From IMG/VR virus record IMGVR_UViG_3300043570_001980, positions 186,001-250,000 of that record: a stretch of 64,000 nucleotides of DNA. One strand, 5' to 3'. A program made the translations under genes and the position numbers. The stretch's first letter is position 1. Each line of letters starts with the position of its first letter. Shown piece after piece: positions 8,815 through 32,320 of the stretch. The notes beneath the pieces are model-generated. The model worked only from the letters and a program-made list of their open reading frames with translations, had not been told where the DNA came from and searched no databases.

Positions 8815-11800
8815 TAATATTCACCTGTCTGGCTTAGTGTGCTGTTTAATCTTCCGGTACTGCTAACACTAACAGGATATAATCCTGACACCGGAGTTTG
8901 ACTTTGAATGTTACTTTGTGTCAGTGCGTCAATCACTTGAACGTCAGCCACTGTTGCTCCATTAACAAAAATTTCATTTGGCGCTGATCTAATTTCATAT
9001 AAATCACCAAAACTTTTCAATGGGTTCAATGGAACAAGAACCACTGAACTGATAATAGAACCCATTTGTGTATGTAGATATGCGGCTAATTCTGAGAAAA
9101 AGAAGCTGTCGCCAAAATCCCATTTATCAATGGTAAAATAATTGTTTACATTTGCAATAACCTGGCTCTTGATTTCGCTAACTGTGGCTGTTACTTTTGG
9201 TGCCTTGACAACTTTAATTGTTGCTCTCAGACTGGCTGCGGCTTTGGGGCCAAATAATGGCTTAAAGACCACTGTGTTAGGTACTAGATTATCAGAAATC
9301 ATTTTATAGTCATCTAGTTTGGCGTAGGCTGTTGACAGCTCTGAAATTGTTGGTGGGCTTGGTTCAGGAACAGTACCTGTGGTGTCTTTGATGTAATTCT
9401 GATAAGCAGTATAATACTCCGCAACTACCAAATATAAGTCAATGATGTTGGTTGATCCTGGATCAATAATGTTAGTCAATGGACTATTATGTCTATATTG
9501 AAATCCAAGTGTTTGTCTGCCAATTCTAGCCTTGTAGATATTTGTTTGCACTAGTGTACGTTGTACAATTCCATTTACTACTGTAAAGACCAACTCATAA
9601 AATACCTTTTCGTCATATGCGTAAAATACTTGTCCACCAACAAATTGAGTTTTAACTACCTCAATGTCATTCTTGGTTGCGTATTGAGCATTTACAATGC
9701 CAGGTTCAACTGGTAGATATCTTTCTAGATTATCAAAATCAACTGTTTGTTTTAAAAATATTAATTTTGAATTTGGATCAATGTTTGGTGCAACAATTTC
9801 ATCAAAGAAGTCTGGGTTATCCGCAACGCCATCAGCATCCGAATCAACATAGCTAACAATAACTTCGTAGTCGTTGACATAGCCGTCGCTTTGTACTGGC
9901 TGTGCAATAATATCCATTTTAACATCGCTGGTCAACGGTTGGTTGCTGTCAGGTTTTGAGTTTGTTTTTAATACTTTTATGAAATCATCAATTACTAATC
10001 CAGTGCGACTGTCATAGATGCTTTCGTTGCCGTCAAAGGTAAAACGTGTTTGTAGTACACTGGCAAAAACATAATCCAACCCACGAGAAACCACTGTGTA
10101 AGAAACCCCGTTGGTAATAAATTGGATTAGCCAGGAAGCATCAAGATTTAATCCTTCGGTATTTTGTGCATAAGAAAGGCTAAACGGAGCATCTTGGTGT
10201 AGGTTTGAGCTGGTAATCAGATACCAGGTCGATGTTAAGTTATTATAACCCAACCCAAAGTTTCTAAACAATTCAATCTGTTGTAACATTTGTTGACGAA
10301 TTGTGCTTGGTAAATCGTCAATAAATTTAGGAATTACTTCTACTGCAAGAGCGCCGGTGGGTACAAAATTGTTTAAAATAACCGGCCCAGTTCCATCAGG
10401 AAAGTTGCCTAGACCTTGGTTAGTTCCGTCTAACACCACTGCCATGATTGTTGCCCAGATAATTAATTTTTCGTCAGCACGTAATGGAACTCCAGCAACT
10501 AGCTTGTTGTTTGCGTCGAAGAAGTATCCTGACGGAGCGGCAAATTTAATCAATGATCCTTGTGTTAAGTATTTGGCATTGTTACTGGCATAGCTACCAA
10601 TAGACTGTGGAGAGGTTGGGGTGCCAACATAAAAATATCCAGTGGTTTCTCTAACCACAGTTGTGCTTTGGTTCCAGGCAAAATTTAATACAGATAAACT
10701 TGGGCGAGGATAATTCGCATAGTAAAACTGTTGCATACTGCGGCCAGGAAGAATTGGTTCTATGTTGTTAGCAATAGTATCAACAATGTCGTTGCGATTG
10801 ATCCAAGCAAAGTCAAAGCTTGGCAATACGTTCTGACGATATAGTACGCCATCAGATGCAAAAATGTTAGTGGAACTGTACTTGCCGGTGATATCAGTAA
10901 AATCTACATATCGACTGGTGCCTGTACTAGACCGTGCCACTGCCTTGCTTTTGATAATGCTATTATACAAAGTAAACGGAAAGTTGTTGTAATCTTCGCC
11001 GTTGACCATACGGTTCTGTGTGTAGTAACGAGCAGGCGCACGTTGTTTAATTTCATCAATGGTTTCACGAGGAGCGGCATTGCTTACTGGAGTTGTAATA
11101 CCGCATGTGAATGTAATTGTTTCCAGGCGCCCTGTGCGGCTGATGTAGCTGATAGGCAAGGAAATACTTTGCATTTCCTCAGGATTAATGATATATCTTA
11201 ATCCATTGCTGGCACGAACATAGGTACGATAAAAGCCCACTGGGACTTCGCTGAATACTCCGTCACCAAATGTCATGGTGATTTGATCATTGGTTCGACT
11301 TGTAATAGAATAAATTTTGCGTTGATCAGGAGAAAGCTGTTCAAGTGCGGCAGCATAGACACTTTCAACATATTTCCACTCAGTGGCAATAGAACCAATA
11401 TTATCCAGTTGATATAACCAATAGTCTTGGTTGTTAATACCTTCAATATTGATGTTGACTGTGCGGTTAGGAAGTGCTTCAGCTAGGTTAAAGTCTTGGT
11501 TTTGCAATACACCCTGTTTAAATAAGAAAAAGAATCCATTGTTTTCACTGCCAAACCCCAGCGAATCGTTGCGGTACATAACATTGAATACGCCATTAGG
11601 ACGAGGTGCTGGTTCATAGATGTAGTCTTTGCCCTGGCTAGTGCCGCTGACTGCTTCGAACGGCATGTTGACGCCGTCAACTGCGGTGGTATAAGGAATG
11701 ACAGGCAAAAACCCAGGTACTAAATTGATTGCATATTCAGAAGTATCAATGCCTAAAAGCGTTTGTTTATTGCCTGGGCGCCCATATTTTTGACTGTCTA

Positions 11801-12293
11801 CTAGACTGGCATTAATAATCAGTGTTAGTTGTTCAAACCAATTTGGGTTTGTTGGGTCGTTCCAATCAATGGTAACATTTGAAAGATTAATTCCGTTGTA
11901 GTCAACAACATTTTCTGTGGTCGACACAGAGAATACTTTTAACAATCCTTGAGCGGCTTCGTTACGCTTTGGAGTATAACTTATAAGATTGGCAAGACGA
12001 ACAACGCTGTCACGACGTTCAGCGGTGTCCATAAAGTTTTCGCGAGTGTTTAGATCATTACGGAATGCAAGACTCTGACCCATAAAGGCCATAACGTCAA
12101 GTAATGCAATAAATTCCGAACTTTCAATGTAGTCATTGAATGTTTCTGGATAATAAAGTCTCAGGTAGTCAACGAAGCTCTTGCGTAGTGTTTCAAAGTC
12201 GTAACTTTGAAAGTCGGCCTCGCGGTAGGTCTGGTATAATCTTTTCCAGTCCTCAACTCCAAATATTGCGGTTTGTCTTGCTGTCTTTGCCAT
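8814..12293 (-). CDS. gp6: Baseplate wedge subunit (T4 gp6-like)
   Basis: 1159 aa. N-terminal DFQSYDFETLRKS..LLDVMAF..ENFMDTAERRDSV..LISYTP and internal FGDG and 'ETIDEIKQRAPARYYTQNRMVNGEDY' motifs typical of gp6/baseplate J; next to a gp25-like gene. Confidence 0.8.
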   Translation of the reverse strand: MAKTARQTAIFGVEDWKRLYQTYREADFQSYDFETLRKSFVDYLRLYYPETFNDYIESSEFIALLDVMAFMGQSLAFRNDLNTRENFMDTAERRDSVVRLANLISYTPKRNEAAQGLLKVFSVSTTENVVDYNGINLSNVTIDWNDPTNPNWFEQLTLIINASLVDSQKYGRPGNKQTLLGIDTSEYAINLVPGFLPVIPYTTAVDGVNMPFEAVSGTSQGKDYIYEPAPRPNGVFNVMYRNDSLGFGSENNGFFFLFKQGVLQNQDFNLAEALPNRTVNINIEGINNQDYWLYQLDNIGSIATEWKYVESVYAAALEQLSPDQRKIYSITSRTNDQITMTFGDGVFSEVPVGFYRTYVRASNGLRYIINPEEMQSISLPISYISRTGRLETITFTCGITTPVSNAAPRETIDEIKQRAPARYYTQNRMVNGEDYNNFPFTLYNSIIKSKAVARSSTGTSRYVDFTDITGKYSSTNIFASDGVLYRQNVLPSFDFAWINRNDIVDTIANNIEPILPGRSMQQFYYANYPRPSLSVLNFAWNQSTTVVRETTGYFYVGTPTSPQSIGSYASNNAKYLTQGSLIKFAAPSGYFFDANNKLVAGVPLRADEKLIIWATIMAVVLDGTNQGLGNFPDGTGPVILNNFVPTGALAVEVIPKFIDDLPSTIRQQMLQQIELFRNFGLGYNNLTSTWYLITSSNLHQDAPFSLSYAQNTEGLNLDASWLIQFITNGVSYTVVSRGLDYVFASVLQTRFTFDGNESIYDSRTGLVIDDFIKVLKTNSKPDSNQPLTSDVKMDIIAQPVQSDGYVNDYEVIVSYVDSDADGVADNPDFFDEIVAPNIDPNSKLIFLKQTVDFDNLERYLPVEPGIVNAQYATKNDIEVVKTQFVGGQVFYAYDEKVFYELVFTVVNGIVQRTLVQTNIYKARIGRQTLGFQYRHNSPLTNIIDPGSTNIIDLYLVVAEYYTAYQNYIKDTTGTVPEPSPPTISELSTAYAKLDDYKMISDNLVPNTVVFKPLFGPKAAASLRATIKVVKAPKVTATVSEIKSQVIANVNNYFTIDKWDFGDSFFFSELAAYLHTQMGSIISSVVLVPLNPLKSFGDLYEIRSAPNEIFVNGATVADVQVIDALTQSNIQSQTPVSGLYPVSVSSTGRLNSTLSQTGEY

Positions 12294-20687: not shown

Positions 20688-21704
20688 ATGACTAATCTAT
20701 TTCGTAAAACGGCTATTTGTACTGACATTCATTTTGGACTAAAGTCAAATAGCCTGGCACACAACCAAGACTGTGAAAATTTTATTGACTGGTTTATTGC
20801 CAAGGCCAAAGAGCAGGGCTGTGAAACTGGCATGTTCCTTGGCGACTGGCATCATCATAGAGCCAGCATTAATCTACAGACCTTGAACTTTAGTCTGCGA
20901 GCGTTGGAAAAACTGTCTAAAGCATTTGATCAGTTTTATTTTATTCCTGGCAATCACGACCTGTACTACAGAGACAAGCGTGATATTCACGGTGCCGAAT
21001 GGGCCAAACATCTACCCAACATACAGATTGTCAACGATTGGTTCAAGCAAGGCGATGTAGTTATTGCTCCCTGGTTGGTGGGAGACGATCACAAGCGCAT
21101 TTCAAAACTGTCAGCTAAATATGTTTTCGGACATTTTGAATTACCACATTTTAAAATGAATGCCATGGTAGAGATGCCGGATCATGGCGAACTACAAGCA
21201 GAGCACTTTACAGGTGTTGAAGAAGTGTATAGCGGTCACTTTCACCTAAGACAAAAAAGACAAAACATCAATTACATTGGCAATTGTTTCCCACATAATT
21301 TTGCCGATGCTGGAGACGACAAACGTGGATGTGCTATTTTAGAATGGGGGAAACCTGTAGAATATCACGCATGGCAGGACCAACCAAGATACCGTGTTCA
21401 CAAACTCAGCGAACTGCTAGATGAAAATAACAAATTGCTCGGCGACAACATGCATGTTCGAATTCAACTTGATATTGATATCAGCTACGAAGAAGCCAAC
21501 TTCATCAAAGAAACGTTCATGCAAAAACATGCCATTAGAGAAATTGGCCTAATTACAGTTAAAAATCAAGATTTAACTTTGGATTTAGCACCAGGTGAAA
21601 TTAAATTTGAAAGTGTTGATCAAATTGTCACACAACAGATCACAGACATTGAATCAGAATTTTACGATTCAAAATTACTGTTGAACATTTACCAGAGTCT
21701 ATAA
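20688..21704 (+). CDS. gp47: Recombination endonuclease subunit (gp47/SbcD/Mre11 metallophosphoesterase)
   Basis: TDIHFG, LGDWHH, PGNHD, FGHFE and SGHFH metallophosphoesterase motifs. Confidence 0.92.
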   Translation: MTNLFRKTAICTDIHFGLKSNSLAHNQDCENFIDWFIAKAKEQGCETGMFLGDWHHHRASINLQTLNFSLRALEKLSKAFDQFYFIPGNHDLYYRDKRDIHGAEWAKHLPNIQIVNDWFKQGDVVIAPWLVGDDHKRISKLSAKYVFGHFELPHFKMNAMVEMPDHGELQAEHFTGVEEVYSGHFHLRQKRQNINYIGNCFPHNFADAGDDKRGCAILEWGKPVEYHAWQDQPRYRVHKLSELLDENNKLLGDNMHVRIQLDIDISYEEANFIKETFMQKHAIREIGLITVKNQDLTLDLAPGEIKFESVDQIVTQQITDIESEFYDSKLLLNIYQSL

Positions 21705-23155
21705 TGAAAGAAGTAATCACAAGAGATTTTATCAATCAACGTATTCGTTTTGTTGAATGTCTAAACAAAGATAAAGTCTACAATATTAAAGAGTTCAACG
21801 ACACAATTAACTATTGGAAAATTATTTTGTACGAAGGGTACAATCTAAGGCCAGGTAACAGAATTTGCATTTATGATTCCACCATTGGATTTTTATATAC
21901 CAGTTTGTTTTTTGCGGCAGCCGAGCTTGGTCTTGAAATCATTACTCCTCCCGAAAAAGCCACAGACGAGTCTGGATATGTAGAACATTTGGAAATCATG
22001 ACTCAAGAACAGGGTCTGTTTGATGCTGCCATCATTGATGAGATTAACCAAAAAAGTTCTAATGTATCGGCCATGGCACAACGATATTGTAAATCTATTA
22101 TCTCTGACCAGGCTTTCTTTTCTTATAAGATCAAAGATGATCAATTATACAAATATCTAGTAGATAACGTTCTTTGTACAGAAGATTCTATTCTGGTACA
22201 TGCAACTACCAGTGGTAGCACTGGGATTCCCAAACCATTGAAATACACACACAAACAACTGCACAGAATTGCTGTGAGAAATATTGATGTTCTTGGTTAT
22301 AAAAATAATTCTGTGTGTCACACAAGAAATCTGCATCATTCATTTATATTAATGACCCACTTCTTGCCGTCAATACACGCATCTGAAGAGCATTATAGTT
22401 TTCCGTTAGGTCGTTGGGAAAATATTAAAGAATTCATTGAGCTGATTAAACAATTAGAAATTTCCAAAGTAGCAATAACTTATAAAGGACTAATCGACAA
22501 TGTATTTTCTATTATGACCAAGTCTGGAGATCAGTTTAAGCATAATATTTCAATTATCGTCGGCGGGTTTCATGTCAGCAACGAATTTATTAAACTAGTA
22601 AAACAAGTAAACATTCAGGAGATTCTTAGTTTATTTGGAACCAATGAAACATTTGGTCCGTTGTTTGTCAAGCATATTAAACAGAGCCAGGATCTTTCCA
22701 CATATCGTCCCGATTGGTATCCACCAACAGATGGAGATTTTTTTACAATCACCGGTGTAGAAAATAAAATTTCTGTTACTGCGGATTCAATTGGTATTAA
22801 AGATATAGTTGTTGAGGATACACTGATCGGAGATAACATCGCAGGATACATACACAAGGGTCGAGAAAATTTATTTAGGATTAACGAAATATATTTTACA
22901 ATTCCCGAAATACACGAAACTGTTGTTCCGTATTGTGATGGAGATTTTGATATTTGTGTGGATGCATCAAATCAAAAATTATATCTTGCTGTCTGGAGTG
23001 GCGCAGTTGAATTTGAAAAATTAAATTTAGCAATGAAAGAAAAATTTAAATTGTTACAATTTGACAAGTATTCCAGACTAGATCGAGACAACTATAGCGG
23101 GTTCAAGGTCAACATGAATTTGTTAAGAAACTTTTTTAACACAATAAAAGAATAA
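21704..23155 (+). CDS. Adenylate-forming (ANL superfamily, acyl-CoA synthetase-like) enzyme
   Basis: P-loop TTSGSTGIPK, FGTNET (A5-like), D..KGREN (A7/A8-like) and terminal SGFKVN (A10-like Lys); AT-rich; inserted between gp47 and gp46. Confidence 0.7.
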   Translation: MKEVITRDFINQRIRFVECLNKDKVYNIKEFNDTINYWKIILYEGYNLRPGNRICIYDSTIGFLYTSLFFAAAELGLEIITPPEKATDESGYVEHLEIMTQEQGLFDAAIIDEINQKSSNVSAMAQRYCKSIISDQAFFSYKIKDDQLYKYLVDNVLCTEDSILVHATTSGSTGIPKPLKYTHKQLHRIAVRNIDVLGYKNNSVCHTRNLHHSFILMTHFLPSIHASEEHYSFPLGRWENIKEFIELIKQLEISKVAITYKGLIDNVFSIMTKSGDQFKHNISIIVGGFHVSNEFIKLVKQVNIQEILSLFGTNETFGPLFVKHIKQSQDLSTYRPDWYPPTDGDFFTITGVENKISVTADSIGIKDIVVEDTLIGDNIAGYIHKGRENLFRINEIYFTIPEIHETVVPYCDGDFDICVDASNQKLYLAVWSGAVEFEKLNLAMKEKFKLLQFDKYSRLDRDNYSGFKVNMNLLRNFFNTIKE

Positions 23156-24973: not shown

Positions 24974-25512
24974 TGCTTGAGTTTGAGTTAGAAATAGCAT
25001 CATCACAAGGTCGCACACCAGGATACCTACGGGTAGATGACCAAAAGACACACCTGTCAGATCCATTGATACATGCTAAATTTATTATTCAAGACCTAGG
25101 ACAATTAAAACTTGTGTTTGGCGGCAAGACAGAAAACGATACGGTAATAGACAGTAATGGTAATATTGTTGCTGATACAGAATTTAGAATCCTTAATATT
25201 AGATGCAATCAAATCAAACTAGAACCCTGGATACTAACTGATTTTGTTTATTACCCTGATTACTTTAGCGGGTATCTACAACAGTTTCCAGACTCTCCGA
25301 TAACTATTACTAGCCCATATCAATATAATTTTCCCGGAACAATAGAATTTAATTGGGTTTCTAATTTTTGGGATTGGTATTTTGAAGAAAAAAATAAACG
25401 AGAAGTCATTGGTTTCTTAGAAAAAGATCCTGATCGTGTTTGGAAGTTTCGTGGCAGTTTAGATCCCTGTGAGGATCTAGTAGAAAAAATAAAAGAACTA
25501 ATACAGCTATGA
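24973..25512 (+). CDS. Hypothetical protein coupled to the radical SAM gene
   Basis: 179 aa ORF overlapping the gp46 stop and the radical SAM start (ATGA). Confidence 0.7.
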   Translation: MLEFELEIASSQGRTPGYLRVDDQKTHLSDPLIHAKFIIQDLGQLKLVFGGKTENDTVIDSNGNIVADTEFRILNIRCNQIKLEPWILTDFVYYPDYFSGYLQQFPDSPITITSPYQYNFPGTIEFNWVSNFWDWYFEEKNKREVIGFLEKDPDRVWKFRGSLDPCEDLVEKIKELIQL

Positions 25513-27086
25513 AACGATTTGCATTTATCAACGTACCAAGTCAAGAGTTAGAAAGACCACCAGCCGCCGCCGCGGCCATAAGTGCTTGTGTACGTAGTGC
25601 TGGTTGGGAATGTAACGTGTATGATTTTAATTTGTTTTTACACAGCAATGTAACTACAGATGTGTGGGTTGAACTTGAACAATACTGGCGTTGCAAAAAA
25701 TATACACTAGAACCCGAAACTCAACAAATATTAAATGACACCATTGATCAATTTTTAACAACTGTAGCTGAGTTTGAGCCTGACATGGTTGGGATTTCTG
25801 TGTTTACTAGATTCAGTGTTATCCCTGCCAGTGTGATGTTGCAGAAGGTACGAGATCAATTAAACTGTAAAATTGTCATAGGCGGAGCAGGTAGCTATGC
25901 TTGGCCAGGAAGTTTGCCAAATTTAACCAAGAACCCGCTGGCATTAGATGCCACAACGTTTGCTGACTATGCACTAAAGACCGGATTAGTTGATTACTAC
26001 ATCCAAGGAGAAGGTGAACAGGCCATCATTGAATTATTAAATGGCAATGATAACTCCAACGGAGTTAACGGAAACCCAGCAGTTCAAATTCGTAAATTAG
26101 ACAAGCTGCCGCATCCTGAATACGAAGGCATTGACCCATCAAATTACTATTACACATCTGAGCCGGGAATTTATATCACTGCATCAAGAGGCTGTGTTAG
26201 GAATTGCAAATTTTGTAGTATTTCAGACATGTGGCCAAAGTATACTTCTCGTAGTGCCGATGATATTGTAAAAGAAATTATCAACGGAAAGAAAAAATAC
26301 AATGTCAACCTATTTCACTTTACCGACAGTTTAATCAACGGTAATATGAAAATGTGGAGAGAAGTAAATCAGCAATTAGTACAAGCTAAAAAACAAGACG
26401 TCAGTTTAGAACCAATAAAATATCTTGGTCAGTTTATTTGTAGAACAAGATTTGATCAAACTGAAAAAGACTGGGAGTTAATGGCCAAGGCTGGTTGTAA
26501 TATGCTGGTCACTGGATTTGAATCTTACAGTCCTCATGTTAGAAAACACATGGGTAAAAATCACACCAATGCAGATATTGATTTCCATTTTGCACAGTCA
26601 GCATATTACGGAATTAAGAATGTTTGTTTAATGTTTGTTGGATACCCTGTTGAAACATTGGAAGACCATAATTATAATATTGAATTTTTACACCGGTATC
26701 AAAAATATGCTCGAGCAGGAGTGATTCACATGGTACGTTGGGGGTACACTGGTATGTTCCGTGAAGAAGGCAAGCTAGCTGGTGATTCAAAAGTAAAACT
26801 AATTACTGATCCAGACTTTGCCAAACGTTTTCATAACCTACCACAAGGGCTTCGTGACATTGCACTGGGCTTTGGATGGGTAAATGAATTAAACCCAACA
26901 CTCACACTAAAAGAACGCATCCGTCGTCGACTAGAGTTACACGAAGTAAGTGTAAAACTAGGATGGCCACAGACTCGTAACAGAGAAGAGTTACAAATTT
27001 TATATAACATTTTACAAAACCTTGACAAGAATGTCATCAACACTCAGGATTTTGAAAACTTAGAAACCTTATTAGATTTTCATTAA
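25509..27086 (+). CDS. Cobalamin-binding (class B-like) radical SAM enzyme
   Basis: N-terminal B12-binding-like region (PDMVGISVF..IVIGG..GEGE) and SRGCVRNCKFC CxxxCxxC; FTDSLING, GFES and FVGYPVET motifs. Confidence 0.88.
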   Translation: MKRFAFINVPSQELERPPAAAAAISACVRSAGWECNVYDFNLFLHSNVTTDVWVELEQYWRCKKYTLEPETQQILNDTIDQFLTTVAEFEPDMVGISVFTRFSVIPASVMLQKVRDQLNCKIVIGGAGSYAWPGSLPNLTKNPLALDATTFADYALKTGLVDYYIQGEGEQAIIELLNGNDNSNGVNGNPAVQIRKLDKLPHPEYEGIDPSNYYYTSEPGIYITASRGCVRNCKFCSISDMWPKYTSRSADDIVKEIINGKKKYNVNLFHFTDSLINGNMKMWREVNQQLVQAKKQDVSLEPIKYLGQFICRTRFDQTEKDWELMAKAGCNMLVTGFESYSPHVRKHMGKNHTNADIDFHFAQSAYYGIKNVCLMFVGYPVETLEDHNYNIEFLHRYQKYARAGVIHMVRWGYTGMFREEGKLAGDSKVKLITDPDFAKRFHNLPQGLRDIALGFGWVNELNPTLTLKERIRRRLELHEVSVKLGWPQTRNREELQILYNILQNLDKNVINTQDFENLETLLDFH

Positions 27087-27148: not shown

Positions 27149-27577
27149 ATGACATGGCTATTTCAAGACACCCCAGTTGAGACATTGCCCGAAGAGTGTG
27201 TTGGATTTGTTTACTTGATTACAAATAATCTCACTGGTCGCAAGTACATAGGCAAAAAACTCGCAAAATTTTCAAAAACCACATACAAAACAGTAACACA
27301 AAAAAACGGCATAAAAAAGCGGAAGAAGATACGCTCGAAGATTGATTCAGATTGGAGAGAGTACTACGGGTCAAGCCCAGAATTAACCGCAGACGTAATC
27401 AAACTAGGCACCGAAAACTTCACCAGAGAAATACTTTATTATTGCAACTCCAAATCAGAATGCAGTTACATTGAAGCAAGAGAACAATTTTCAAGACGAG
27501 TATTAGAATCGCAAGATTATTACAACGGCCATATACAAGTTAGAGTACACGGTAGTCATATTAGAGGAAAACTATGA
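27149..27577 (+). CDS. Small GIY-YIG-family nuclease
   Basis: GFVYLITNNLTGRKYIGKK..YYGSS..FTREIL..E..YYN. Confidence 0.8.
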   Translation: MTWLFQDTPVETLPEECVGFVYLITNNLTGRKYIGKKLAKFSKTTYKTVTQKNGIKKRKKIRSKIDSDWREYYGSSPELTADVIKLGTENFTREILYYCNSKSECSYIEAREQFSRRVLESQDYYNGHIQVRVHGSHIRGKL

Positions 27578-28380
27578 GTGAAATTTTTTTACAAAAGTTT
27601 TATGACAATGTCAAAGATTTGTCTTGGCCTCAACTTATTGAAACCTACAGTGACTTTGTAAAATTGCCCGATAGTATCAAAAACGAATGTTATCAACAGC
27701 ATGGACTAGAATCAACACTGAATCAAATTGAAGATTCCGATTACTGGCTTGCCAGTCATCGGTCCAGGGTAGTGGTGTACCGACATCATTCTTTGGTGTT
27801 TATACCTGTGCCAAAATGCGGATTTATTTACTATCATGATTTGTTTACTCGTATAGGGTGGGAACAAATTACCCTGGACAAAGTAAATTTTGATCAGCAC
27901 ATTGTTTTTACTGCTATCATGAATCCAACGGATCGATATCTCAAAGGCTTAACTGAGTGGTTCTGGAAAAGAATTAGATTTGATAATTTTGACAATTTAG
28001 AACAGCAAGAACTATTTTTTAACATAGCATCTGACATACTGATTACTGATATACACACAATGCCATACACCGTCGAATATCAAGGTATTATCAATAAGAT
28101 ACATTGGATTCCGTCTGACAACTTGTCTGACAACGAAGTAAAACAATCAATGATGCATTTGTTTAAAAAACACAATTACAATATACAGCTACCACTTGAC
28201 GACCCCCGATTACATCAATCCAACCCAAAAAAACTAAAGCTTTACCAGGCATTAAAAAATGTACACATCCGTAAAAAACAAAAAACTTTTGAATTGTTGT
28301 ACGTTTTTTTAGCAGAAGATTTAAAATTTTACCGGCAGCTAGTTAATAAATTTGACCCAACTTGGTCTAAAAACATTTAA
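27574..28380 (+). CDS. Sulfotransferase-fold-like protein with an N-terminal KxxxWP mini-domain
   Basis: VFIPVPKCG (5'-PSB-like), MNPTDRYLKG (3'-PB-like RxPxxR), D.HT.P and terminal EDLKFY resemble Sulfotransfer_2-type proteins; motifs are degenerate. Confidence 0.5.
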   Translation: MSEIFLQKFYDNVKDLSWPQLIETYSDFVKLPDSIKNECYQQHGLESTLNQIEDSDYWLASHRSRVVVYRHHSLVFIPVPKCGFIYYHDLFTRIGWEQITLDKVNFDQHIVFTAIMNPTDRYLKGLTEWFWKRIRFDNFDNLEQQELFFNIASDILITDIHTMPYTVEYQGIINKIHWIPSDNLSDNEVKQSMMHLFKKHNYNIQLPLDDPRLHQSNPKKLKLYQALKNVHIRKKQKTFELLYVFLAEDLKFYRQLVNKFDPTWSKNI

Positions 28381-28394
28381 TTTTAAGCAGTTAC

Positions 28395-28826
28395 GACTCG
28401 CACAGGTCAATTTCGTGTGCCCTAGACCTGGATCTCGGATCACAGGGACGGAAGTCTTGCCGCTCTAGCAAGCACTCAATCACTACCCGAAAGGATGACG
28501 ATCGCTAATTGCCGCGGTTTGATTGTTTGAAAAGAATTTAAAGGCTAAAAAGACGCAGAAGTGATTCTGCAGGTTAATATAGTATGTTAGCGTATATTAT
28601 ATTGATTGCCGTTGTATAAAGACGCAACTCGAGGTACCGGACAACCGCCTCTGTAATGTTGTAACGCTATGTGGCTATTCGAACTCGGATAATGCTTTTA
28701 ATCTTTGCCCTGTGCGGGCAAAGTGTGACCAAAGAATCTGGATAATAACTGTAATCTCACTTCGCTCGATGTTTATAATAATATTGATGAGCGATAGCGA
28801 AATCAATAGAACTTCAACGAAGTTCT
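28395..28826 (+). ncRNA. Candidate structured non-coding RNA (or replication-origin/ssi-like structured DNA)
   Basis: ORF-free gap with at least 9 hairpins, including GCAGAA-GTGA-TTCTGC and CC-GAAA-GG (GNRA loops), CTTTGCCC-TGTGC-GGGCAAAG, CCTGGATC-TCG-GATCACAGG, a G.U-containing AATATAGTATGT/GTATATTATATT stem, and GAACTTC-AAC-GAAGTTC. Confidence 0.5.
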
Positions 28827-28836
28827 CATAAAGCCG

Positions 28837-29172
28837 TTATAAGTTAGTATCTGGCCAATCTCTAAACAATGCATGTTGAATATCACCAGCAACAAACTGA
28901 TTGAATGACTTGTGTTTCTCTTCGAGTTCTCCTTTGAGTGGTGCTACTCGTTTGAACGCATTGTCCATCTGACCCATGTCTCTAAACTCCATGAGTATCA
29001 TCCACTCTGGCATGTCGGCAATACTACGGAATCCCATTTTACATCTTGTGATTCTGTACGATACCATCTTGTCTTCGGAGATCAAATGATCAAAGAAACT
29101 TTTCATTCCGTTGACCCAGTCTAAGTCTGAGATATCGCCTTCTTTGTTTGCCCAAATTGTGTATAAGTCCAT
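28837..29172 (-). CDS. Small conserved protein (DUF6614-like, possible dimeric alpha/beta barrel)
   Basis: 111 aa; YRITRCKMGFRS..PEWMILMEF..QMDNAF..H..F..ALFRDWPD; last gene of the amidinotransferase operon. Confidence 0.55.
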   Translation of the reverse strand: MDLYTIWANKEGDISDLDWVNGMKSFFDHLISEDKMVSYRITRCKMGFRSIADMPEWMILMEFRDMGQMDNAFKRVAPLKGELEEKHKSFNQFVAGDIQHALFRDWPDTNL

Positions 29173-29173
29173 T

Positions 29174-30145
29174 TTATATTTCCTCTCTGTGAAGATCGCT
29201 GGTTACACAATGCAGACCATTGTCCCAAAAACACTTGTGTCTAAACTGTGAAACATGCGGAGTAACTTGATGCCGTTTGAGTGCATCAAATATTTGTTGA
29301 TTGTAGCCACTGATCACTACATTTTTATTGTCGATGATCAACATGTTTAATTCAAAAACAGTTTCTGCTACATAACCCAACAAATTCTTAAAGTAACAAT
29401 CAATAAACTCTGTGAGTTTATTATTACTTTCTTGCCCTGGCAACCACCAAGATCCTGTGTGTGTTGCTTGCCAATTCTTAAATGATGGTAATTTTTCTAG
29501 ACTGGGTTTGATATAAACTATTTCCCAATCATAGAAATACATTTTAAAAAATAGTTTTAGTAGTTGGTGATTTGCAGGATCGTCTATGGCTATAATCAAT
29601 CCTGGTGTAACAGGACAAAACCATCCATCAATATGCCCAGTCTGATGAAAAGCTGTTAATTTTTTATTGCTGGCTCTATTTTGTAAAAATTCATGAGCTG
29701 ATTTATTATTAGAATAAAATACACAGTCGAGAAATTGATAAACAGTGGCACCACACACTGATGGTAGATTAATTTCTATTTCTTGATTACCCTGAGCAAT
29801 CACATGATCAGAAATGTTTTTATAAAAATCCGGATCTATGTTATTGTAAAATGATTTAACAAGTTTATTTCCTAGCATTAACAAATGATCCCTGGCTGCC
29901 AACGGCGCCTTTGGTAGATTGTCAACATCAACATCAACAACACCTGCTGTTGGCCTAAGCGTGTGTACTCCAAGAGCATTCAGATTAACTGCTAGTGTAT
30001 GTAGGTCTTCTTCGGTTTCACTGGCAATTGTTTCAAAATGATTTCGAATCTCAACGTTGTTGATCCAACTATAAAACTCAGGACTCCAACTGCGGCCAAC
30101 CACACAGGTTTTTAGTCTATGCCATTCGCTGTTAATCTGATACAT
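29174..30145 (-). CDS. Amidinotransferase-family protein (copy 2)
   Basis: SEWHRLKTCVVG, ARDHL, GHIDGWF, FELNML and C-terminal DNGLHCVTSDL (His and Cys catalytic motifs of the AGAT/StrB1 family). Confidence 0.85.
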   Translation of the reverse strand: MYQINSEWHRLKTCVVGRSWSPEFYSWINNVEIRNHFETIASETEEDLHTLAVNLNALGVHTLRPTAGVVDVDVDNLPKAPLAARDHLLMLGNKLVKSFYNNIDPDFYKNISDHVIAQGNQEIEINLPSVCGATVYQFLDCVFYSNNKSAHEFLQNRASNKKLTAFHQTGHIDGWFCPVTPGLIIAIDDPANHQLLKLFFKMYFYDWEIVYIKPSLEKLPSFKNWQATHTGSWWLPGQESNNKLTEFIDCYFKNLLGYVAETVFELNMLIIDNKNVVISGYNQQIFDALKRHQVTPHVSQFRHKCFWDNGLHCVTSDLHREEI

Positions 30146-30588
30146 TACACCAACGGACCTAATATCTCAAAGCCATCAATATCTTGTTTGTATAAATGTG
30201 CTTGCTCTAAGTATAAAAATTTAAAACCACGCTGTTTATAGATAGCACATTCTGTTTTCATTGTTTCAATGCCTAGTCGCATTTTGGGTCGATGATAGGT
30301 CCAAGCAAATTGGTCGCATTGTGCGTTATACTGGTCAAATCTACGTATCAGGCTAAATGCAACCAGTTCAGCGTTGTCGTAGTAGCCAATGATGTCAGCC
30401 ATTGGATCTTGATAGCGACTGTGAAATATAGGCATTACTGATGAAAAATGTTTGTAGGTACAGTAGTACTTGTATATTTCATCTAGCTTGTTGAGTGTGG
30501 TTTCATCACGATCAGTGATGTAATTCCAACCAACAGTGGGTAGGTAATTGGTTTTATCTAGGTCAATTCTGGCAAATTGATAAGTCAT
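30145..30588 (-). CDS. Arginyl-tRNA-protein transferase (ATE/Bpt) C-terminal-like GNAT-fold protein
   Basis: GYYDNAELVAFSLI..FAWTY..RLGIETMKTECAIYKQRGFKFLYL..YK resembles the ATE_C pattern (LG..S...EI..A...G..YLYLG..YK). Confidence 0.55.
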   Translation of the reverse strand: MTYQFARIDLDKTNYLPTVGWNYITDRDETTLNKLDEIYKYYCTYKHFSSVMPIFHSRYQDPMADIIGYYDNAELVAFSLIRRFDQYNAQCDQFAWTYHRPKMRLGIETMKTECAIYKQRGFKFLYLEQAHLYKQDIDGFEILGPLV

Positions 30589-31814
30589 GTTCTATCCGGA
30601 AAAAAATCTTGCTGGATACCTTTTCGGTCCAGGTCCAAGGTAACACAATGTACACCACCGTCCCAGAAGTATCTGTGTCGCAAAGGGCAAATGTGAGGAG
30701 TTATGTTGTGACGTTTAAAAGCATCAAATGCTTTTTCATTGTAGCTGTTGACAATGACATTTTGTTGATTGATCACAAGGATATTTACATCAAACACACT
30801 TTCCTCAACATACCCTACCCAATCTTGCAACCATGTTTCTACATATTCAATCAGTTCGTCATCGTATTCACTACCCTTGATCCACCAACGCCCTTGATTT
30901 TTTTCTTTAAGGTCCAAAAATGATTTCACTTTGTTCCAGCCTTCTCCGCTCAGGTATACAACTTCCCATCCAGGAAATGTATCTGCATAGGTAGGCATAT
31001 CTTCTATGCTCACAATAAGACCAGGCTTAACAGGAGTAAAACAACCGTCGATATGTCCACCAGTGGTCACAATATGATTTCTAAAGTCTGGAAAAAAATG
31101 TTCAGTTAGTTTTTTGATTTTGTCGATATCGGCAGATTCAGATATCCCAAAAAATAAATCTTTTCCGATACGGGTGATTCCATTAGTTGGAATTTGATTT
31201 AACATGTCATGATATTGATTTTCAATGATAGGATTACCAGCTGACTTCACAAGACCAGTAACCGGTTCCCACCAGTCGAACTCACTAGCCTTGGATATAA
31301 TTTCATCAGAATTGTCACCAGGTTTAAACTCAAACTGAAACAAGTTTTTACATTCTTCTTGGATCCAAACTGGCAGCTGATCAAATGGAGTAAATTCTTG
31401 TGGCCAATCAGGACCTTTAAAGTTGTTGTAATTTTTTTTAGTCCAATTACCAGGAGGCATGATACTTCGTCCTGATGATTTTATGCTGATGTTGTCGTAA
31501 GGAAACACAAAAAAGTCTGATCCAATCATAATCATCTGATCTCTTGGAATCATGCTAACAGGGCCAGGTATGCGACGATTTTGTGTCAGTAACCGATCTA
31601 GTTGTACTGTGGGTACATTTGGTCTTACAGTCTTTACATTGAACTTTTCAAGTAATGTCACAAGATTCACAAAGTCTTCTTCAGTTTCAGTAGCAATACG
31701 TTCAAACAAACTGCGTAATCGTGGATTTTTTATAAAGCTATAAAACTCAGGAGGATAACTTTTACCCACAACACAAACTTGCAATGGATCCCACGGTTGA
31801 TGTACACTATACAT
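30585..31814 (-). CDS. Amidinotransferase-family protein (copy 1) with an internal KxxxWP insertion
   Basis: WDPLQVCVVG, PRDQ, TRIGKD, GHIDGCF, FDVNIL and DGGVHCVTLDL motifs. Confidence 0.88.
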   Translation of the reverse strand: MYSVHQPWDPLQVCVVGKSYPPEFYSFIKNPRLRSLFERIATETEEDFVNLVTLLEKFNVKTVRPNVPTVQLDRLLTQNRRIPGPVSMIPRDQMIMIGSDFFVFPYDNISIKSSGRSIMPPGNWTKKNYNNFKGPDWPQEFTPFDQLPVWIQEECKNLFQFEFKPGDNSDEIISKASEFDWWEPVTGLVKSAGNPIIENQYHDMLNQIPTNGITRIGKDLFFGISESADIDKIKKLTEHFFPDFRNHIVTTGGHIDGCFTPVKPGLIVSIEDMPTYADTFPGWEVVYLSGEGWNKVKSFLDLKEKNQGRWWIKGSEYDDELIEYVETWLQDWVGYVEESVFDVNILVINQQNVIVNSYNEKAFDAFKRHNITPHICPLRHRYFWDGGVHCVTLDLDRKGIQQDFFPDRT

Positions 31815-32320
31815 TATGTTTTCCTTGGATCCTGTCTGTGGTGAAACAGGGCTTGTAGATATTCTTCAGGCCAAGAGTGATAAAATCCTTTGTCAGCCAT
31901 TTGCTTGGCTTTGGTGTTTAAATCACTTAGACTTTGTACCAATGCTAATGCATACGTGCCTTGATTCATGCACACACCATTGATCATTTCAACATCATCT
32001 GGGTGATCTTCTAGTGCCAACATGTCTCTAGGTAACAGTACTTCCTTGTTAACCAATTCAATACTACCAGCAAGCATATCGTGTGACCATTCTGTTGGAT
32101 CGTACACATAGATAATAACTTCTCGGTTGCCCATGCCTTGACGCCCACAATTTTTAAGATCGTAGTAGGGATCGGCTCCAAGATAAACTGCATAGCTGTT
32201 CTTTACTCGTGCTGACCGTGCATAAGGACAAGGAGAAAATCCCCCTAATGCAGGATGTGGAACTTCTAAGAAGTTTGTAATCCACAGTTCTATATCTTGT
32301 TTGACTTGTTCTAGTTCCAT
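31814..32320 (-). CDS. Hypothetical protein (DUF1415-like CPYAR motif)
   Basis: 168 aa; WI..F..PCPYAR..DHP..LVQ..L..GFYHSW; translationally coupled on both sides. Confidence 0.55.
   Translation of the reverse strand: MELEQVKQDIELWITNFLEVPHPALGGFSPCPYARSARVKNSYAVYLGADPYYDLKNCGRQGMGNREVIIYVYDPTEWSHDMLAGSIELVNKEVLLPRDMLALEDHPDDVEMINGVCMNQGTYALALVQSLSDLNTKAKQMADKGFYHSWPEEYLQALFHHRQDPRKT

What the first reader, a model, noticed from the sequence alone, without database searches (positions are those of the whole stretch)
27598..31430. Same ~30 aa mini-domain in two unrelated enzymes
Seen: the sulfotransferase-like protein starts with FYDNVKDLSWPQLIETYSDFVKLPDSIKNEC (27598-27690). Amidinotransferase 1 carries NYNNFKGPDWPQEFTPFDQLPVWIQEEC (31430-31350) as an insertion that amidinotransferase 2 lacks. 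Consensus: Y..(V/F)K...WP...(x)n..F..LP..I..EC. Inference: a mobile tag or docking module that recruits diverse tailoring enzymes to a shared substrate, scaffold or compartment, linking the scattered enzymes into one system.
Basis: partly seen in the sequence, partly recalled or inferred. Interest (0 to 1): 0.7.

Follow-up and report, generated by a model that had tools for sequence, protein, structure and literature searches.

The report
Portable mini-domain shared by phage enzymes
A roughly 40-residue helical module that two unrelated enzymes of this lake-water T4-like phage share is a real, undescribed, apparently phage-only protein domain that recurs in hundreds of tailoring enzymes, and it most likely serves as a common docking or recognition handle.

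Summary
The sulfotransferase-fold ORF (27574-28380 +) carries the motif Y..VK...WP...DF..LP..I..EC...H at its N-terminus. The amidinotransferase-fold ORF (30585-31814 -) carries it as an internal insert. The similarity is significant: family profiles align at hhalign E 8e-8, each family's HMM finds the other as its top non-self hit, and 0 of 5000 shuffles reach the real score.

A 42-position profile finds 869 protein clusters among 1.84 billion. The module sits N-terminal, internal, C-terminal, in tandem or alone. Its hosts include methyltransferases, radical SAM enzymes, three sulfotransferase-like families, amidinotransferases (some catalytically dead), a GDSL-like hydrolase and DUF6492.

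A stringent DNA pattern hits 84 IMG/VR viral contigs and 0 of 185,579 prokaryote species genomes. Pfam, NCBIfam and PDB sequence searches have no model for it.

The module is all-helical and acidic, and it is conserved as protein, not as DNA. My best reading is a portable adaptor that directs a phage's tailoring enzymes to a shared target. That function is inferred, not shown, and no partner was identified.

The parts
27574..28380 (+). ORF 'S', 268 aa: a sulfotransferase-fold enzyme with the module at its N-terminus.
   Evidence: AF2 model pLDDT 89. The top 18 VIA-align matches are all sulfotransferases (heparan sulfate 2-O-sulfotransferase Z 8.5) and align only from model residue 71/72 onward. 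The PKCG loop is invariant in 14 homologues. No Pfam, PHROG or NCBIfam hit.
27586..27747 (+). Module copy 1: core residues 5-45 (27586-27708), with a trailing helix to residue 58.
   Evidence: Core HMM 66-70 bits. W18, P19, L31, E38 and C39 are invariant in the family. Helices 2-13, 25-29, 33-42, 45-52 and 55-63 in the model.
30585..31814 (-). ORF 'ATase1', 409 aa: an amidinotransferase-fold enzyme with the module as an internal insert.
   Evidence: Foldseek matches HsvA, AGAT, SxtG and StrB1 at E 5e-17 to 1.6e-15. H254, C390 and D92 are invariant. 3434 homologues.
31269..31445 (-). Module copy 2: core residues 124-161 (31332-31445), with a trailing helix to residue 182.
   Evidence: Core HMM 64-69 bits. 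Y129, W137, P138, P148 and E154 are conserved in at least 90% of the 18 sequences aligned. Helices 126-132, 149-157, 169-176 and 183-191.
29174..30145 (-). ORF 'ATase2', 323 aa: a paralogue without the module. A vestige of the module's first helix remains at 29813-29857.
   Evidence: 29% identity to ATase1. In the alignment of 10 phage amidinotransferases it alone lacks the module, yet it keeps FYNNI-DPDF in register.
27149..27577 (+). SegE-like GIY-YIG homing endonuclease gene directly upstream of S. It marks the left edge of an indel that consists of the S gene.
   Evidence: Pfam PF19835 E 3.6e-33. Window 27553-28378 is absent from the 94%-identical relative G002.
28837..32320 (-). Five close-packed minus-strand genes around the two amidinotransferases: DUF6875-like, ATase1, a 147-aa ORF, ATase2 and DUF6614. 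The first three junctions overlap start and stop codons; a 1-nt gap precedes DUF6614.
   Evidence: ORF coordinates; Pfam.

Best explanation
The shared segment is one copy each of an autonomous protein domain. It has about 40 core residues, or about 55 with a trailing helix. It is helical (three helices in the core), acidic, and so far found only in tailed-phage contigs.

Shown:
- The domain is homologous between the two enzymes.
- It is bolted onto the catalytic folds: before the sulfotransferase core, and inside a loop of the amidinotransferase propeller.
- The same domain occurs in many other tailoring-enzyme families, at either end, internally, duplicated in tandem, or as a small standalone gene.
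- One phage genome carries three to four such genes scattered over its length.

Inferred: because the domain is independent of the catalytic chemistry and survives in enzymes that have lost their catalytic residues, it most likely acts as a common adaptor. Its conserved polar face (K10, D11, D/E22, E33, H38 in profile numbering) would bind one shared partner. That partner could be a phage-specified substrate, such as a glycan or a virion or precursor protein, or a scaffold.

This logic resembles the RiPP recognition element that many peptide-tailoring enzymes share, although the fold differs. My confidence that this is a real portable domain is about 0.95. The 0.45 below refers to the adaptor function.
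For: Homology:
- hhalign E 8.3e-8.
- Reciprocal HMM hits.
- 0 of 5000 shuffles reach the real score.

Add-on nature:
- Sulfotransferase structures align only from residue 71/72 of S.
- The paralogue ATase2 and the cyanophage S-SCSM2R homologue lack the module.

Promiscuity:
- 869 representatives at E<=1e-3 in 1.84e9 proteins.
- The best 150 form 34 groups after the module is masked.
- Hosts include several class I methyltransferases, FkbM, radical SAM enzymes, DUF6492, a GDSL-like protein, ADI/amidinotransferase-like proteins and sulfotransferase-like families.

Autonomy:
- A 106-aa gene made of two modules sits just upstream of a radical SAM/SPASM gene, and there is an 80-aa standalone gene.
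- Tandem copies occur in radical SAM proteins.

Independence from catalysis: amidinotransferase homologues P0148 and P0238 lack the catalytic His and Cys but keep a near-consensus module.

Several per genome:
- 3 in G000 and 4 in the 99%-complete 345-kb relative G002.
- 22 of 80 IMG/VR loci hold two or more within 15 kb.
- A sulfotransferase-like gene and an amidinotransferase gene, both with the module, occur in the same locus in 16 loci.

Phage restriction: 84 viral contigs versus 0 prokaryote genomes for one stringent pattern. The contexts carry PhoH, clamp loader and RNase H genes.

Conserved polar residues: K/R10 95%, D/E22 92%, E33 97%, H38 71%.
Against: - No partner was identified.
- Most conserved positions (Y6, V/I9, W14, P15, F23, L26, P27, I30, C34) could simply build the hydrophobic core of a mini-fold, and K10-E33 could be an internal salt bridge.
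- Modules in the same genome are no more alike than modules from different genomes (mean excess identity -0.025, n=26). So there is no sign of co-adaptation to a genome-specific partner.
- The module-less homologue in cyanophage S-SCSM2R is nevertheless reported in the virion proteome (PMC12801897). The module is therefore not needed for that association.
- All carriers come from uncultured phages, so no experiment bears on it.
Confidence: 0.45

Rival explanations
1. Structural or lid sub-domain. The module is a stable mini-fold that evolution reuses to cap or shape the substrate pocket of each enzyme separately, and there is no common partner.
For: - The module is predicted with high confidence in both models (block pLDDT means 84-95 in S and 83-93 in ATase1).
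- Conserved positions follow one face of each helix, as a packed core would.
- In the Marine virus AG-345-D19 amidinotransferases, a different and unrelated insert sits at the same site. That site is therefore a generally variable region.
- There is no within-genome co-adaptation.
- From general knowledge of class I methyltransferase and sulfotransferase folds, N-terminal extensions and late insertions commonly form substrate lids.
Against: - Standalone genes and tandem duplicates exist.
- The module occurs at the extreme C-terminus of a ~420-aa family.
- It is retained in catalytically dead homologues.
- The sequence stays nearly the same across chemistries that share no substrate.
Confidence: 0.27
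2. Homotypic assembly tag. Modules bind one another, so module-bearing enzymes cluster into one multi-enzyme complex. Small tandem-module proteins would act as bridges.
For: Several carriers occur per genome. A standalone protein consists of two modules. Tandem copies occur inside enzymes.
Against: There is no positive evidence for self-association. The uniformly acidic charge (mean -3.5) does not favour simple self-association.
Confidence: 0.12
3. Selfish in-frame DNA element, like Rickettsia palindromic elements, that inserts into genes and is tolerated as a surface peptide.
For: The module occurs at varied positions in unrelated genes, and the flanking gene content is flexible. The S gene is a precise indel next to a homing endonuclease gene.
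Against: - DNA copies align at only about 55% column identity, with matches confined to constrained codons.
- There is no palindromic or hairpin potential (z -0.45 and +1.98).
- Within each host family the module evolves with the protein and keeps invariant residues.
- There is no excess similarity within genomes.
Confidence: 0.02
4. Chance or convergent resemblance of two short helical segments.
For: The pairwise BLASTP E-value is only 0.002.
Against: Profile-profile E 8.3e-8, the shuffle controls, and 869 further carriers with the same invariant W-P, L-P and E.
Confidence: 0.01

Closest known systems
RiPP recognition element (RRE, PqqD-like domain)
   Same: It is a small non-catalytic domain found fused to many unrelated tailoring enzymes, at either end or standalone. 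The standalone form often sits beside a radical SAM/SPASM enzyme, as P0140 does. It directs different chemistries to one substrate.
   Different: The RRE is about 85-90 residues and is a winged helix-turn-helix with a three-stranded sheet (established knowledge). This module is about 40-55 residues and all-helical in both models. It has no Pfam match of any kind, even at E<=10. It is phage-restricted, and no precursor peptide has been identified.
Docking modules of multi-enzyme systems (dockerin-cohesin, PKS/NRPS docking domains)
   Same: These are short portable modules appended to diverse catalytic domains, whose job is assembly rather than catalysis.
   Different: No cognate receptor or scaffold is known here. 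The module is also inserted inside folds, not only at the ends. There is no sequence relationship.
Rickettsia palindromic elements (in-frame selfish insertions)
   Same: A segment of about 40 residues appears inside many unrelated proteins.
   Different: Those elements are conserved and palindromic as DNA. This module is conserved only as protein.
Variable inserts of the guanidino-group-modifying (pentein) fold
   Same: Relative to solved amidinotransferases, ATase1 carries about 90 extra residues. Foldseek alignments span 449-471 columns against targets of 340-364 residues. Another phage lineage carries a different insert at the same site.
   Different: Here the core of the insert is a module shared with non-pentein enzymes.

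Membership tests
Sulfotransferase fold (host protein S) | Three-dimensional similarity to solved PAPS-dependent sulfotransferases | tested here: met
   VIA-align wide search: ranks 1-18 are all sulfotransferases, best Z 8.5, 150-176 residues aligned over ranks 1-17 (140 at rank 18). Foldseek is weak (E about 0.1), but its hits are also mostly sulfotransferases. Z of 8 is moderate.
Sulfotransferase fold (host protein S) | 5'-phosphosulfate-binding loop, PKxG(S/T)-type, after the first strand | tested here: met
   PVPKCG at residues 78-83; K81 and C82 are invariant in 14 homologues. The motif definition comes from established knowledge.
Sulfotransferase fold (host protein S) | Match to a curated sulfotransferase sequence model | tested here: not met
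   No Pfam, PHROG or NCBIfam hit. The Atlas feature search points to Sulfotransfer_2 at only 0.84, which is a lead. Sulfotransfer activity itself is untested.
Amidinotransferase / pentein superfamily (host protein ATase1) | Fold similarity to solved amidinotransferases | tested here: met
   Foldseek E 5.5e-17 to 1.6e-15, probability 1.00, to 5wpi, 2jdx, 4jdw, 6u1r and 1bwd.
Amidinotransferase / pentein superfamily (host protein ATase1) | Catalytic Cys near the C-terminus, with His and Asp | tested here: met
   C390 (HCVT), H254 (GGHIDG) and D92 are invariant columns in 18 sequences. The assignment to catalytic roles is by analogy, not by structural superposition.
RiPP recognition element (PqqD-like) | Winged helix-turn-helix of about 85-90 residues with a three-stranded beta-sheet | tested here: not met
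   The module regions are helices only in both AF2 models, and the core is 42 profile positions.
RiPP recognition element (PqqD-like) | Sequence match to the PqqD family model | tested here: not met
   No Pfam family at E<=10 for four module segments.
RiPP recognition element (PqqD-like) | Binds the leader of a co-encoded precursor peptide | not tested
   No precursor was sought systematically. The 456-nt gap after S holds no convincing small ORF.
In-frame selfish DNA repeats (RPE-like) | Copies conserved at DNA level with palindromic structure | tested here: not met
   About 55% column identity; folding z-scores -0.45 and +1.98.
Any curated protein domain family | Significant match of the module to Pfam-A, NCBIfam, or a PDB chain sequence | tested here: not met
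   Pfam, NCBIfam, and PDB profile searches of two carrier families. The only PHROG match (ATase1 to phrog_25854) covers residues 210-398, downstream of the module; S has no PHROG hit.

The most novel reading that the evidence does not exclude
T4-like phages of lakes and other waters possess their own universal enzyme address tag. One 40-residue domain would route a whole toolkit of sulfo-, methyl-, amidino-, acyl- and radical-SAM tailoring enzymes, and even dead enzyme shells, to a single phage-made target. That target could be a virion protein or glycan, or an assembly scaffold. This would be functionally parallel to RiPP leader recognition but evolutionarily independent of it and confined to viruses.
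Probability: 0.3. Interest if true: 0.8.

Novelty: new variant of a known kind. Interest (0 to 1): 0.62.

Why it matters
Large aquatic myoviruses carry many orphan 'auxiliary' enzymes whose targets are unknown. A shared, phage-only domain gives a handle that ties these scattered genes together. It defines a testable set of at least 869 protein clusters. It offers a bait (the isolated module) with which the common target could be fished out. It also provides an HMM that would annotate proteins which currently have no family assignment at all.

If the adaptor reading holds, it would be a second, independent invention of the 'one recognition domain, many tailoring enzymes' principle known from RiPP biosynthesis. 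Even if the role is only structural, this is an unusually promiscuous mini-fold that is missing from the domain databases.

Tried and rejected
- **Related loci:** The search for related loci with the module alignment failed because no stretch was conserved enough.
- **Deposited phages:** megablast of the region, tblastn of S and tblastn of a 49-aa module segment against 50,697 deposited phage records found nothing.
- **Nearest deposited amidinotransferase homologues:** S-SCSM2R and Marine virus AG-345-D19 lack the module.
- **Atlas searches of the module alone:** the feature search gave only sub-threshold sulfotransferase leads, and the structure search gave non-specific helical matches with TM 0.41-0.58.
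- **PDB profile searches of two carrier families:** no usable hit. The GT10-like reading of the ~420-aa family with a C-terminal module rests on an Atlas score of 0.79 and on a TEK-type motif in its consensus that I recognise from memory. It is a lead only.
- **Complex prediction of S with ATase1:** no verdict, score 0.00. This is not evidence either way.
- **Metal site or disulfide:** Cys17 and Cys34 do not co-vary, and both are dispensable in whole families. Rejected.
- **Nucleic-acid binding:** unlikely, because the mean net charge is -3.5.
- **Within-genome co-adaptation or gene conversion of modules:** none found.
- **Neighbour-gene census around 80 IMG/VR carriers:** it recovered only local synteny of one dominant carrier family and no candidate partner.
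- **P0139:** this 2025-aa hit with 9 stretches is a repetitive protein. No module domain passed the re-scan, so it was discarded as spurious.
- **Weak module-like stretch** in the genome's own radical SAM/SPASM protein (G000 10648-11895): it scores only about 5 bits and is left open.
Full report
**1. Setting**

The window is bases 29451-93450 of a 175,184-bp viral contig. CheckV rates the contig 45% complete. A 94-98% identical relative, G002, is 345 kb and 99% complete.

The phage is T4-like. It has a Gp20-type portal (PF07230, E 1.6e-102) and a T4 baseplate protein. It also has a Metallophos ORF followed by a 599-aa ORF that I read from its sequence as SbcD/SbcC-like (gp47/gp46-type). That 599-aa ORF retrieves over 600 related loci in IMG/VR.

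The region's sequence is held by at least 23 lake-water metagenome runs. No deposited phage resembles the region at DNA level.

**2. The observation**

ORF S (27574-28380 +, 268 aa) begins with the stated peptide at exactly 27598-27690. No other frame in the window matches the motif. The paralogue ATase2 (29174-30145 -, 323 aa, 29% identical) lacks it.

**3. Is it more than chance?**

- Pairwise BLASTP gives E 0.002.
- Both segments are conserved within their own families. In 14 S homologues F9, W18, P19, L31, E38, C39, H43, Y57 and W58 are invariant. In the 18 sequences aligned (ATase1, 16 homologues and ATase2), Y129, W137, P138, P148, E154, W181 and W182 are conserved in at least 90% of rows.
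- Profile against profile, hhalign aligns exactly these regions: 63 columns, probability 94.5%, E 8.3e-8.
- An HMM built from one family alone finds the other protein as the best non-self hit among 2682 six-frame ORFs of the genome (E 2.6e-5 and 4.7e-6).
- The real cross-family scores (20.8 and 22.2 bits) exceed all 5000 residue shuffles, whose maximum is 11.6.

**4. The host proteins really are unrelated**

The AF2 model of ATase1 (pLDDT 81) matches the polyamine amidinotransferase HsvA, human AGAT, SxtG and StrB1 at E 5.5e-17 to 1.6e-15. H254, C390 and D92 are invariant.

The model of S (pLDDT 89) matches only sulfotransferases in the top 18 ranks of an exhaustive structural scan, with a best Z of 8.5. 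It has the PKCG phosphosulfate-loop motif. Those alignments start at residue 71/72, so the first 70 residues of S are an appendage to the catalytic fold.

In both models the module is helical. In S the helices are 2-13, then the W-P loop, then 25-29, 33-42, 45-52 and 55-63. In ATase1 they are 126-132, then the W-P loop, then 149-157, 169-176 and 183-191.

**5. It is a widespread portable domain**

Searching relatives' whole records with the module profile found it in other scaffolds:
- further amidinotransferase paralogues of 375-397 aa;
- a 281-aa GDSL-like protein, with the module at residues 145-181;
- a ~270-aa family, with the module at about residues 156-198.

The ~270-aa family also has a member in this genome outside the window (G000 119342-120169, 46 bits). 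That protein looks sulfotransferase-like by Atlas features (0.93-0.94) and by structure.

A 42-position core profile (A4) was then run against 1.84 billion representative proteins. It found 869 with E<=1e-3 and 57 with E<=1e-10.

After the module was masked, the best 150 fell into 34 groups. The module is N-terminal in the S-like group, C-terminal in a ~420-aa group, internal in several groups, and tandem in radical SAM proteins.

Pfam identifies the following among the hosts:
- Methyltransf_31/12/25, MTS, PrmA-like, FkbM and Methyltransf_24;
- Radical_SAM, in at least three groups;
- DUF6492;
- weak ADI matches.

The module itself has no Pfam, NCBIfam or PDB-sequence counterpart.

**6. Profile of the module**

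In 229 distinct instances the conserved positions are as follows:

| Position | Residue | Share |
|---|---|---|
| 6 | Y | 97% |
| 9 | V/I | 94% |
| 10 | K/R | 95% |
| 14 | W | 99% |
| 15 | P | 99% |
| 22 | D/E | 92% |
| 23 | F | 86% |
| 26 | L | 99% |
| 27 | P | 95% |
| 30 | I | 93% |
| 33 | E | 97% |
| 34 | C | 87% |
| 38 | H | 71% |

The mean net charge is -3.5. The two frequent cysteines (positions 17 and 34) do not co-vary, and whole families lack them. This argues against a metal site or a disulfide, and the acidity argues against nucleic-acid binding.

**7. Phage restriction and copy number**

A stringent DNA pattern for WP-(10 residues)-LPxWIxxECxxxH gave 0 matches in one genome each of 185,579 prokaryote species (596 Gb). 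It gave 84 matches in IMG/VR. Contigs encoding carriers show PhoH, clamp-loader, RNase H and similar phage genes.

Of 80 fetched loci, 22 hold two or more carrier genes within 15 kb. A sulfotransferase-like carrier and an amidinotransferase carrier share a locus in 16 of them. This genome has three carriers, and the complete relative G002 has four, spread from 16 kb to 205 kb.

**8. Clues to function**

- *Autonomy.* P0140 is a complete 106-aa gene made of two modules. It overlaps the start of a radical SAM/SPASM gene. P0155 is an 80-aa standalone gene.
- *Independence from catalysis.* Two amidinotransferase-family representatives, P0148 and P0238, have lost the His and Cys but keep a near-consensus module.
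- *A variable site.* ATase2 retains only FYNNI-DPDF at the module's position. Marine virus AG-345-D19 homologues carry a different insert there.
- *Not a DNA element.* The DNA copies are about 55% identical and non-palindromic.
- *No genome-specific co-adaptation*.
- *The enzyme repertoire.* Sulfo-, methyl-, amidino- and acyl-transfer or hydrolysis, radical SAM and a possible glycosyltransferase are the hosts, and one carrier has an APS kinase gene as neighbour. This is the kind of toolkit used to tailor glycans, peptides or proteins.
- *Literature context.* Iyer et al. (PMC2938197) predicted that sulfotransferase and dioxygenase operons modify co-encoded tail-collar or collagen-like proteins. 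A module-less homologue of these amidinotransferases was detected in the virion proteome of cyanophage S-SCSM2R (PMC12801897). These make virion components a reasonable candidate target, but they do not show it. That homologue's association also does not need the module.

**9. Interpretation**

Shown: this is a real, homologous, portable, phage-restricted domain that has no entry in the Pfam, NCBIfam or PDB-sequence libraries searched.

Inferred, at about 0.45: it is an adaptor that brings different tailoring enzymes to one shared partner or substrate.

Main rival, at about 0.27: it is a reusable structural or lid element without a common partner. Homotypic assembly stands at about 0.12. A selfish DNA element and chance are essentially excluded.

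The only direct binding test available, a complex prediction of S with ATase1, returned no verdict and is not counted.

**10. Novelty**

Small non-catalytic domains shared by tailoring enzymes are a known kind; the RRE and docking domains are examples. This one differs in fold, size and taxonomic range, and it fails the RRE membership tests. I therefore file it as a new variant of that kind, not as a member of any known family.

Noticed in passing
window 28395-28528 (+): Strong match to Rfam RF01718, Polynucleobacter-1 RNA (120 bits against a gathering score of 37, E 1.5e-27, full length). It lies in the 456-nt gap just after the S gene. The region is retained in relative G002, which lacks S.
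   Followed up: partly
window 27553-28378: The S gene is a precise presence/absence polymorphism. A relative that is 94% identical on both sides (G002, locus L185) has 17 nt in place of these 826 nt. The left edge lies in the last codons of a SegE-like GIY-YIG homing endonuclease gene (27149-27577).
   Followed up: partly
window 21704-23155 (+): An AMP-binding (adenylate-forming) enzyme gene (PF00501, E 1e-9) sits between a Metallophos ORF (PF00149) and the 599-aa ORF that I read as SbcD/SbcC-like (gp47/gp46-type). Such a pair would usually be adjacent.
   Followed up: no
window 25509-27086 (+): A B12-binding radical SAM enzyme (PF04055 E 2.6e-19; PF02310) lies in the same flexible island. It does not carry the module.
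   Followed up: no
window 28837-32320 (-): Five close-packed minus-strand genes: DUF6875-like, ATase1, a 147-aa ORF, ATase2 and DUF6614. The first three junctions overlap start and stop codons by 1-4 nt; a 1-nt gap precedes DUF6614. The 147-aa ORF has no family hit. From memory, its C-terminal YLxxxxxYKxxxxGFExLG pattern recalls aminoacyl-tRNA-protein transferases. That is unsupported by any tool here.
   Followed up: partly
proteins P0148 and P0238 (alignment A6): These amidinotransferase-family proteins have lost the catalytic His and Cys but keep a near-consensus module. They look like pseudo-enzymes retained for a non-catalytic role.
   Followed up: partly
L183 59-1599; own genome G000 10648-11895 (locus L002): A standalone two-module gene directly precedes a radical SAM/SPASM gene. 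This phage has a close homologue of that SPASM enzyme outside the window. It contains a very weak module-like stretch (Y.ML..G.WP.EN..FW, about 5 bits).
   Followed up: partly
L181 3938-5320 and L182 9923-11293 (Marine virus AG-345-D19): Homologous amidinotransferases carry a longer, unrelated insert at the same position as the module. That loop is therefore a hot spot for accessory segments.
   Followed up: partly
IMG/VR loci L096-L175: A ~330-370-aa sulfotransferase-like carrier (N-terminal GGTHGNF motif) and a ~410-aa amidinotransferase carrier share a locus in 16 loci. They overlap or abut in, for example, L142 (2809-3876 and 3774-5012). One carrier (P0147) is followed by an APS kinase gene.
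   Followed up: partly
whole contig G000: CheckV rates the 175-kb record 45% complete, and the near-identical G002 is 345 kb. The window probably comes from a fragment of a jumbo myovirus genome.
   Followed up: no
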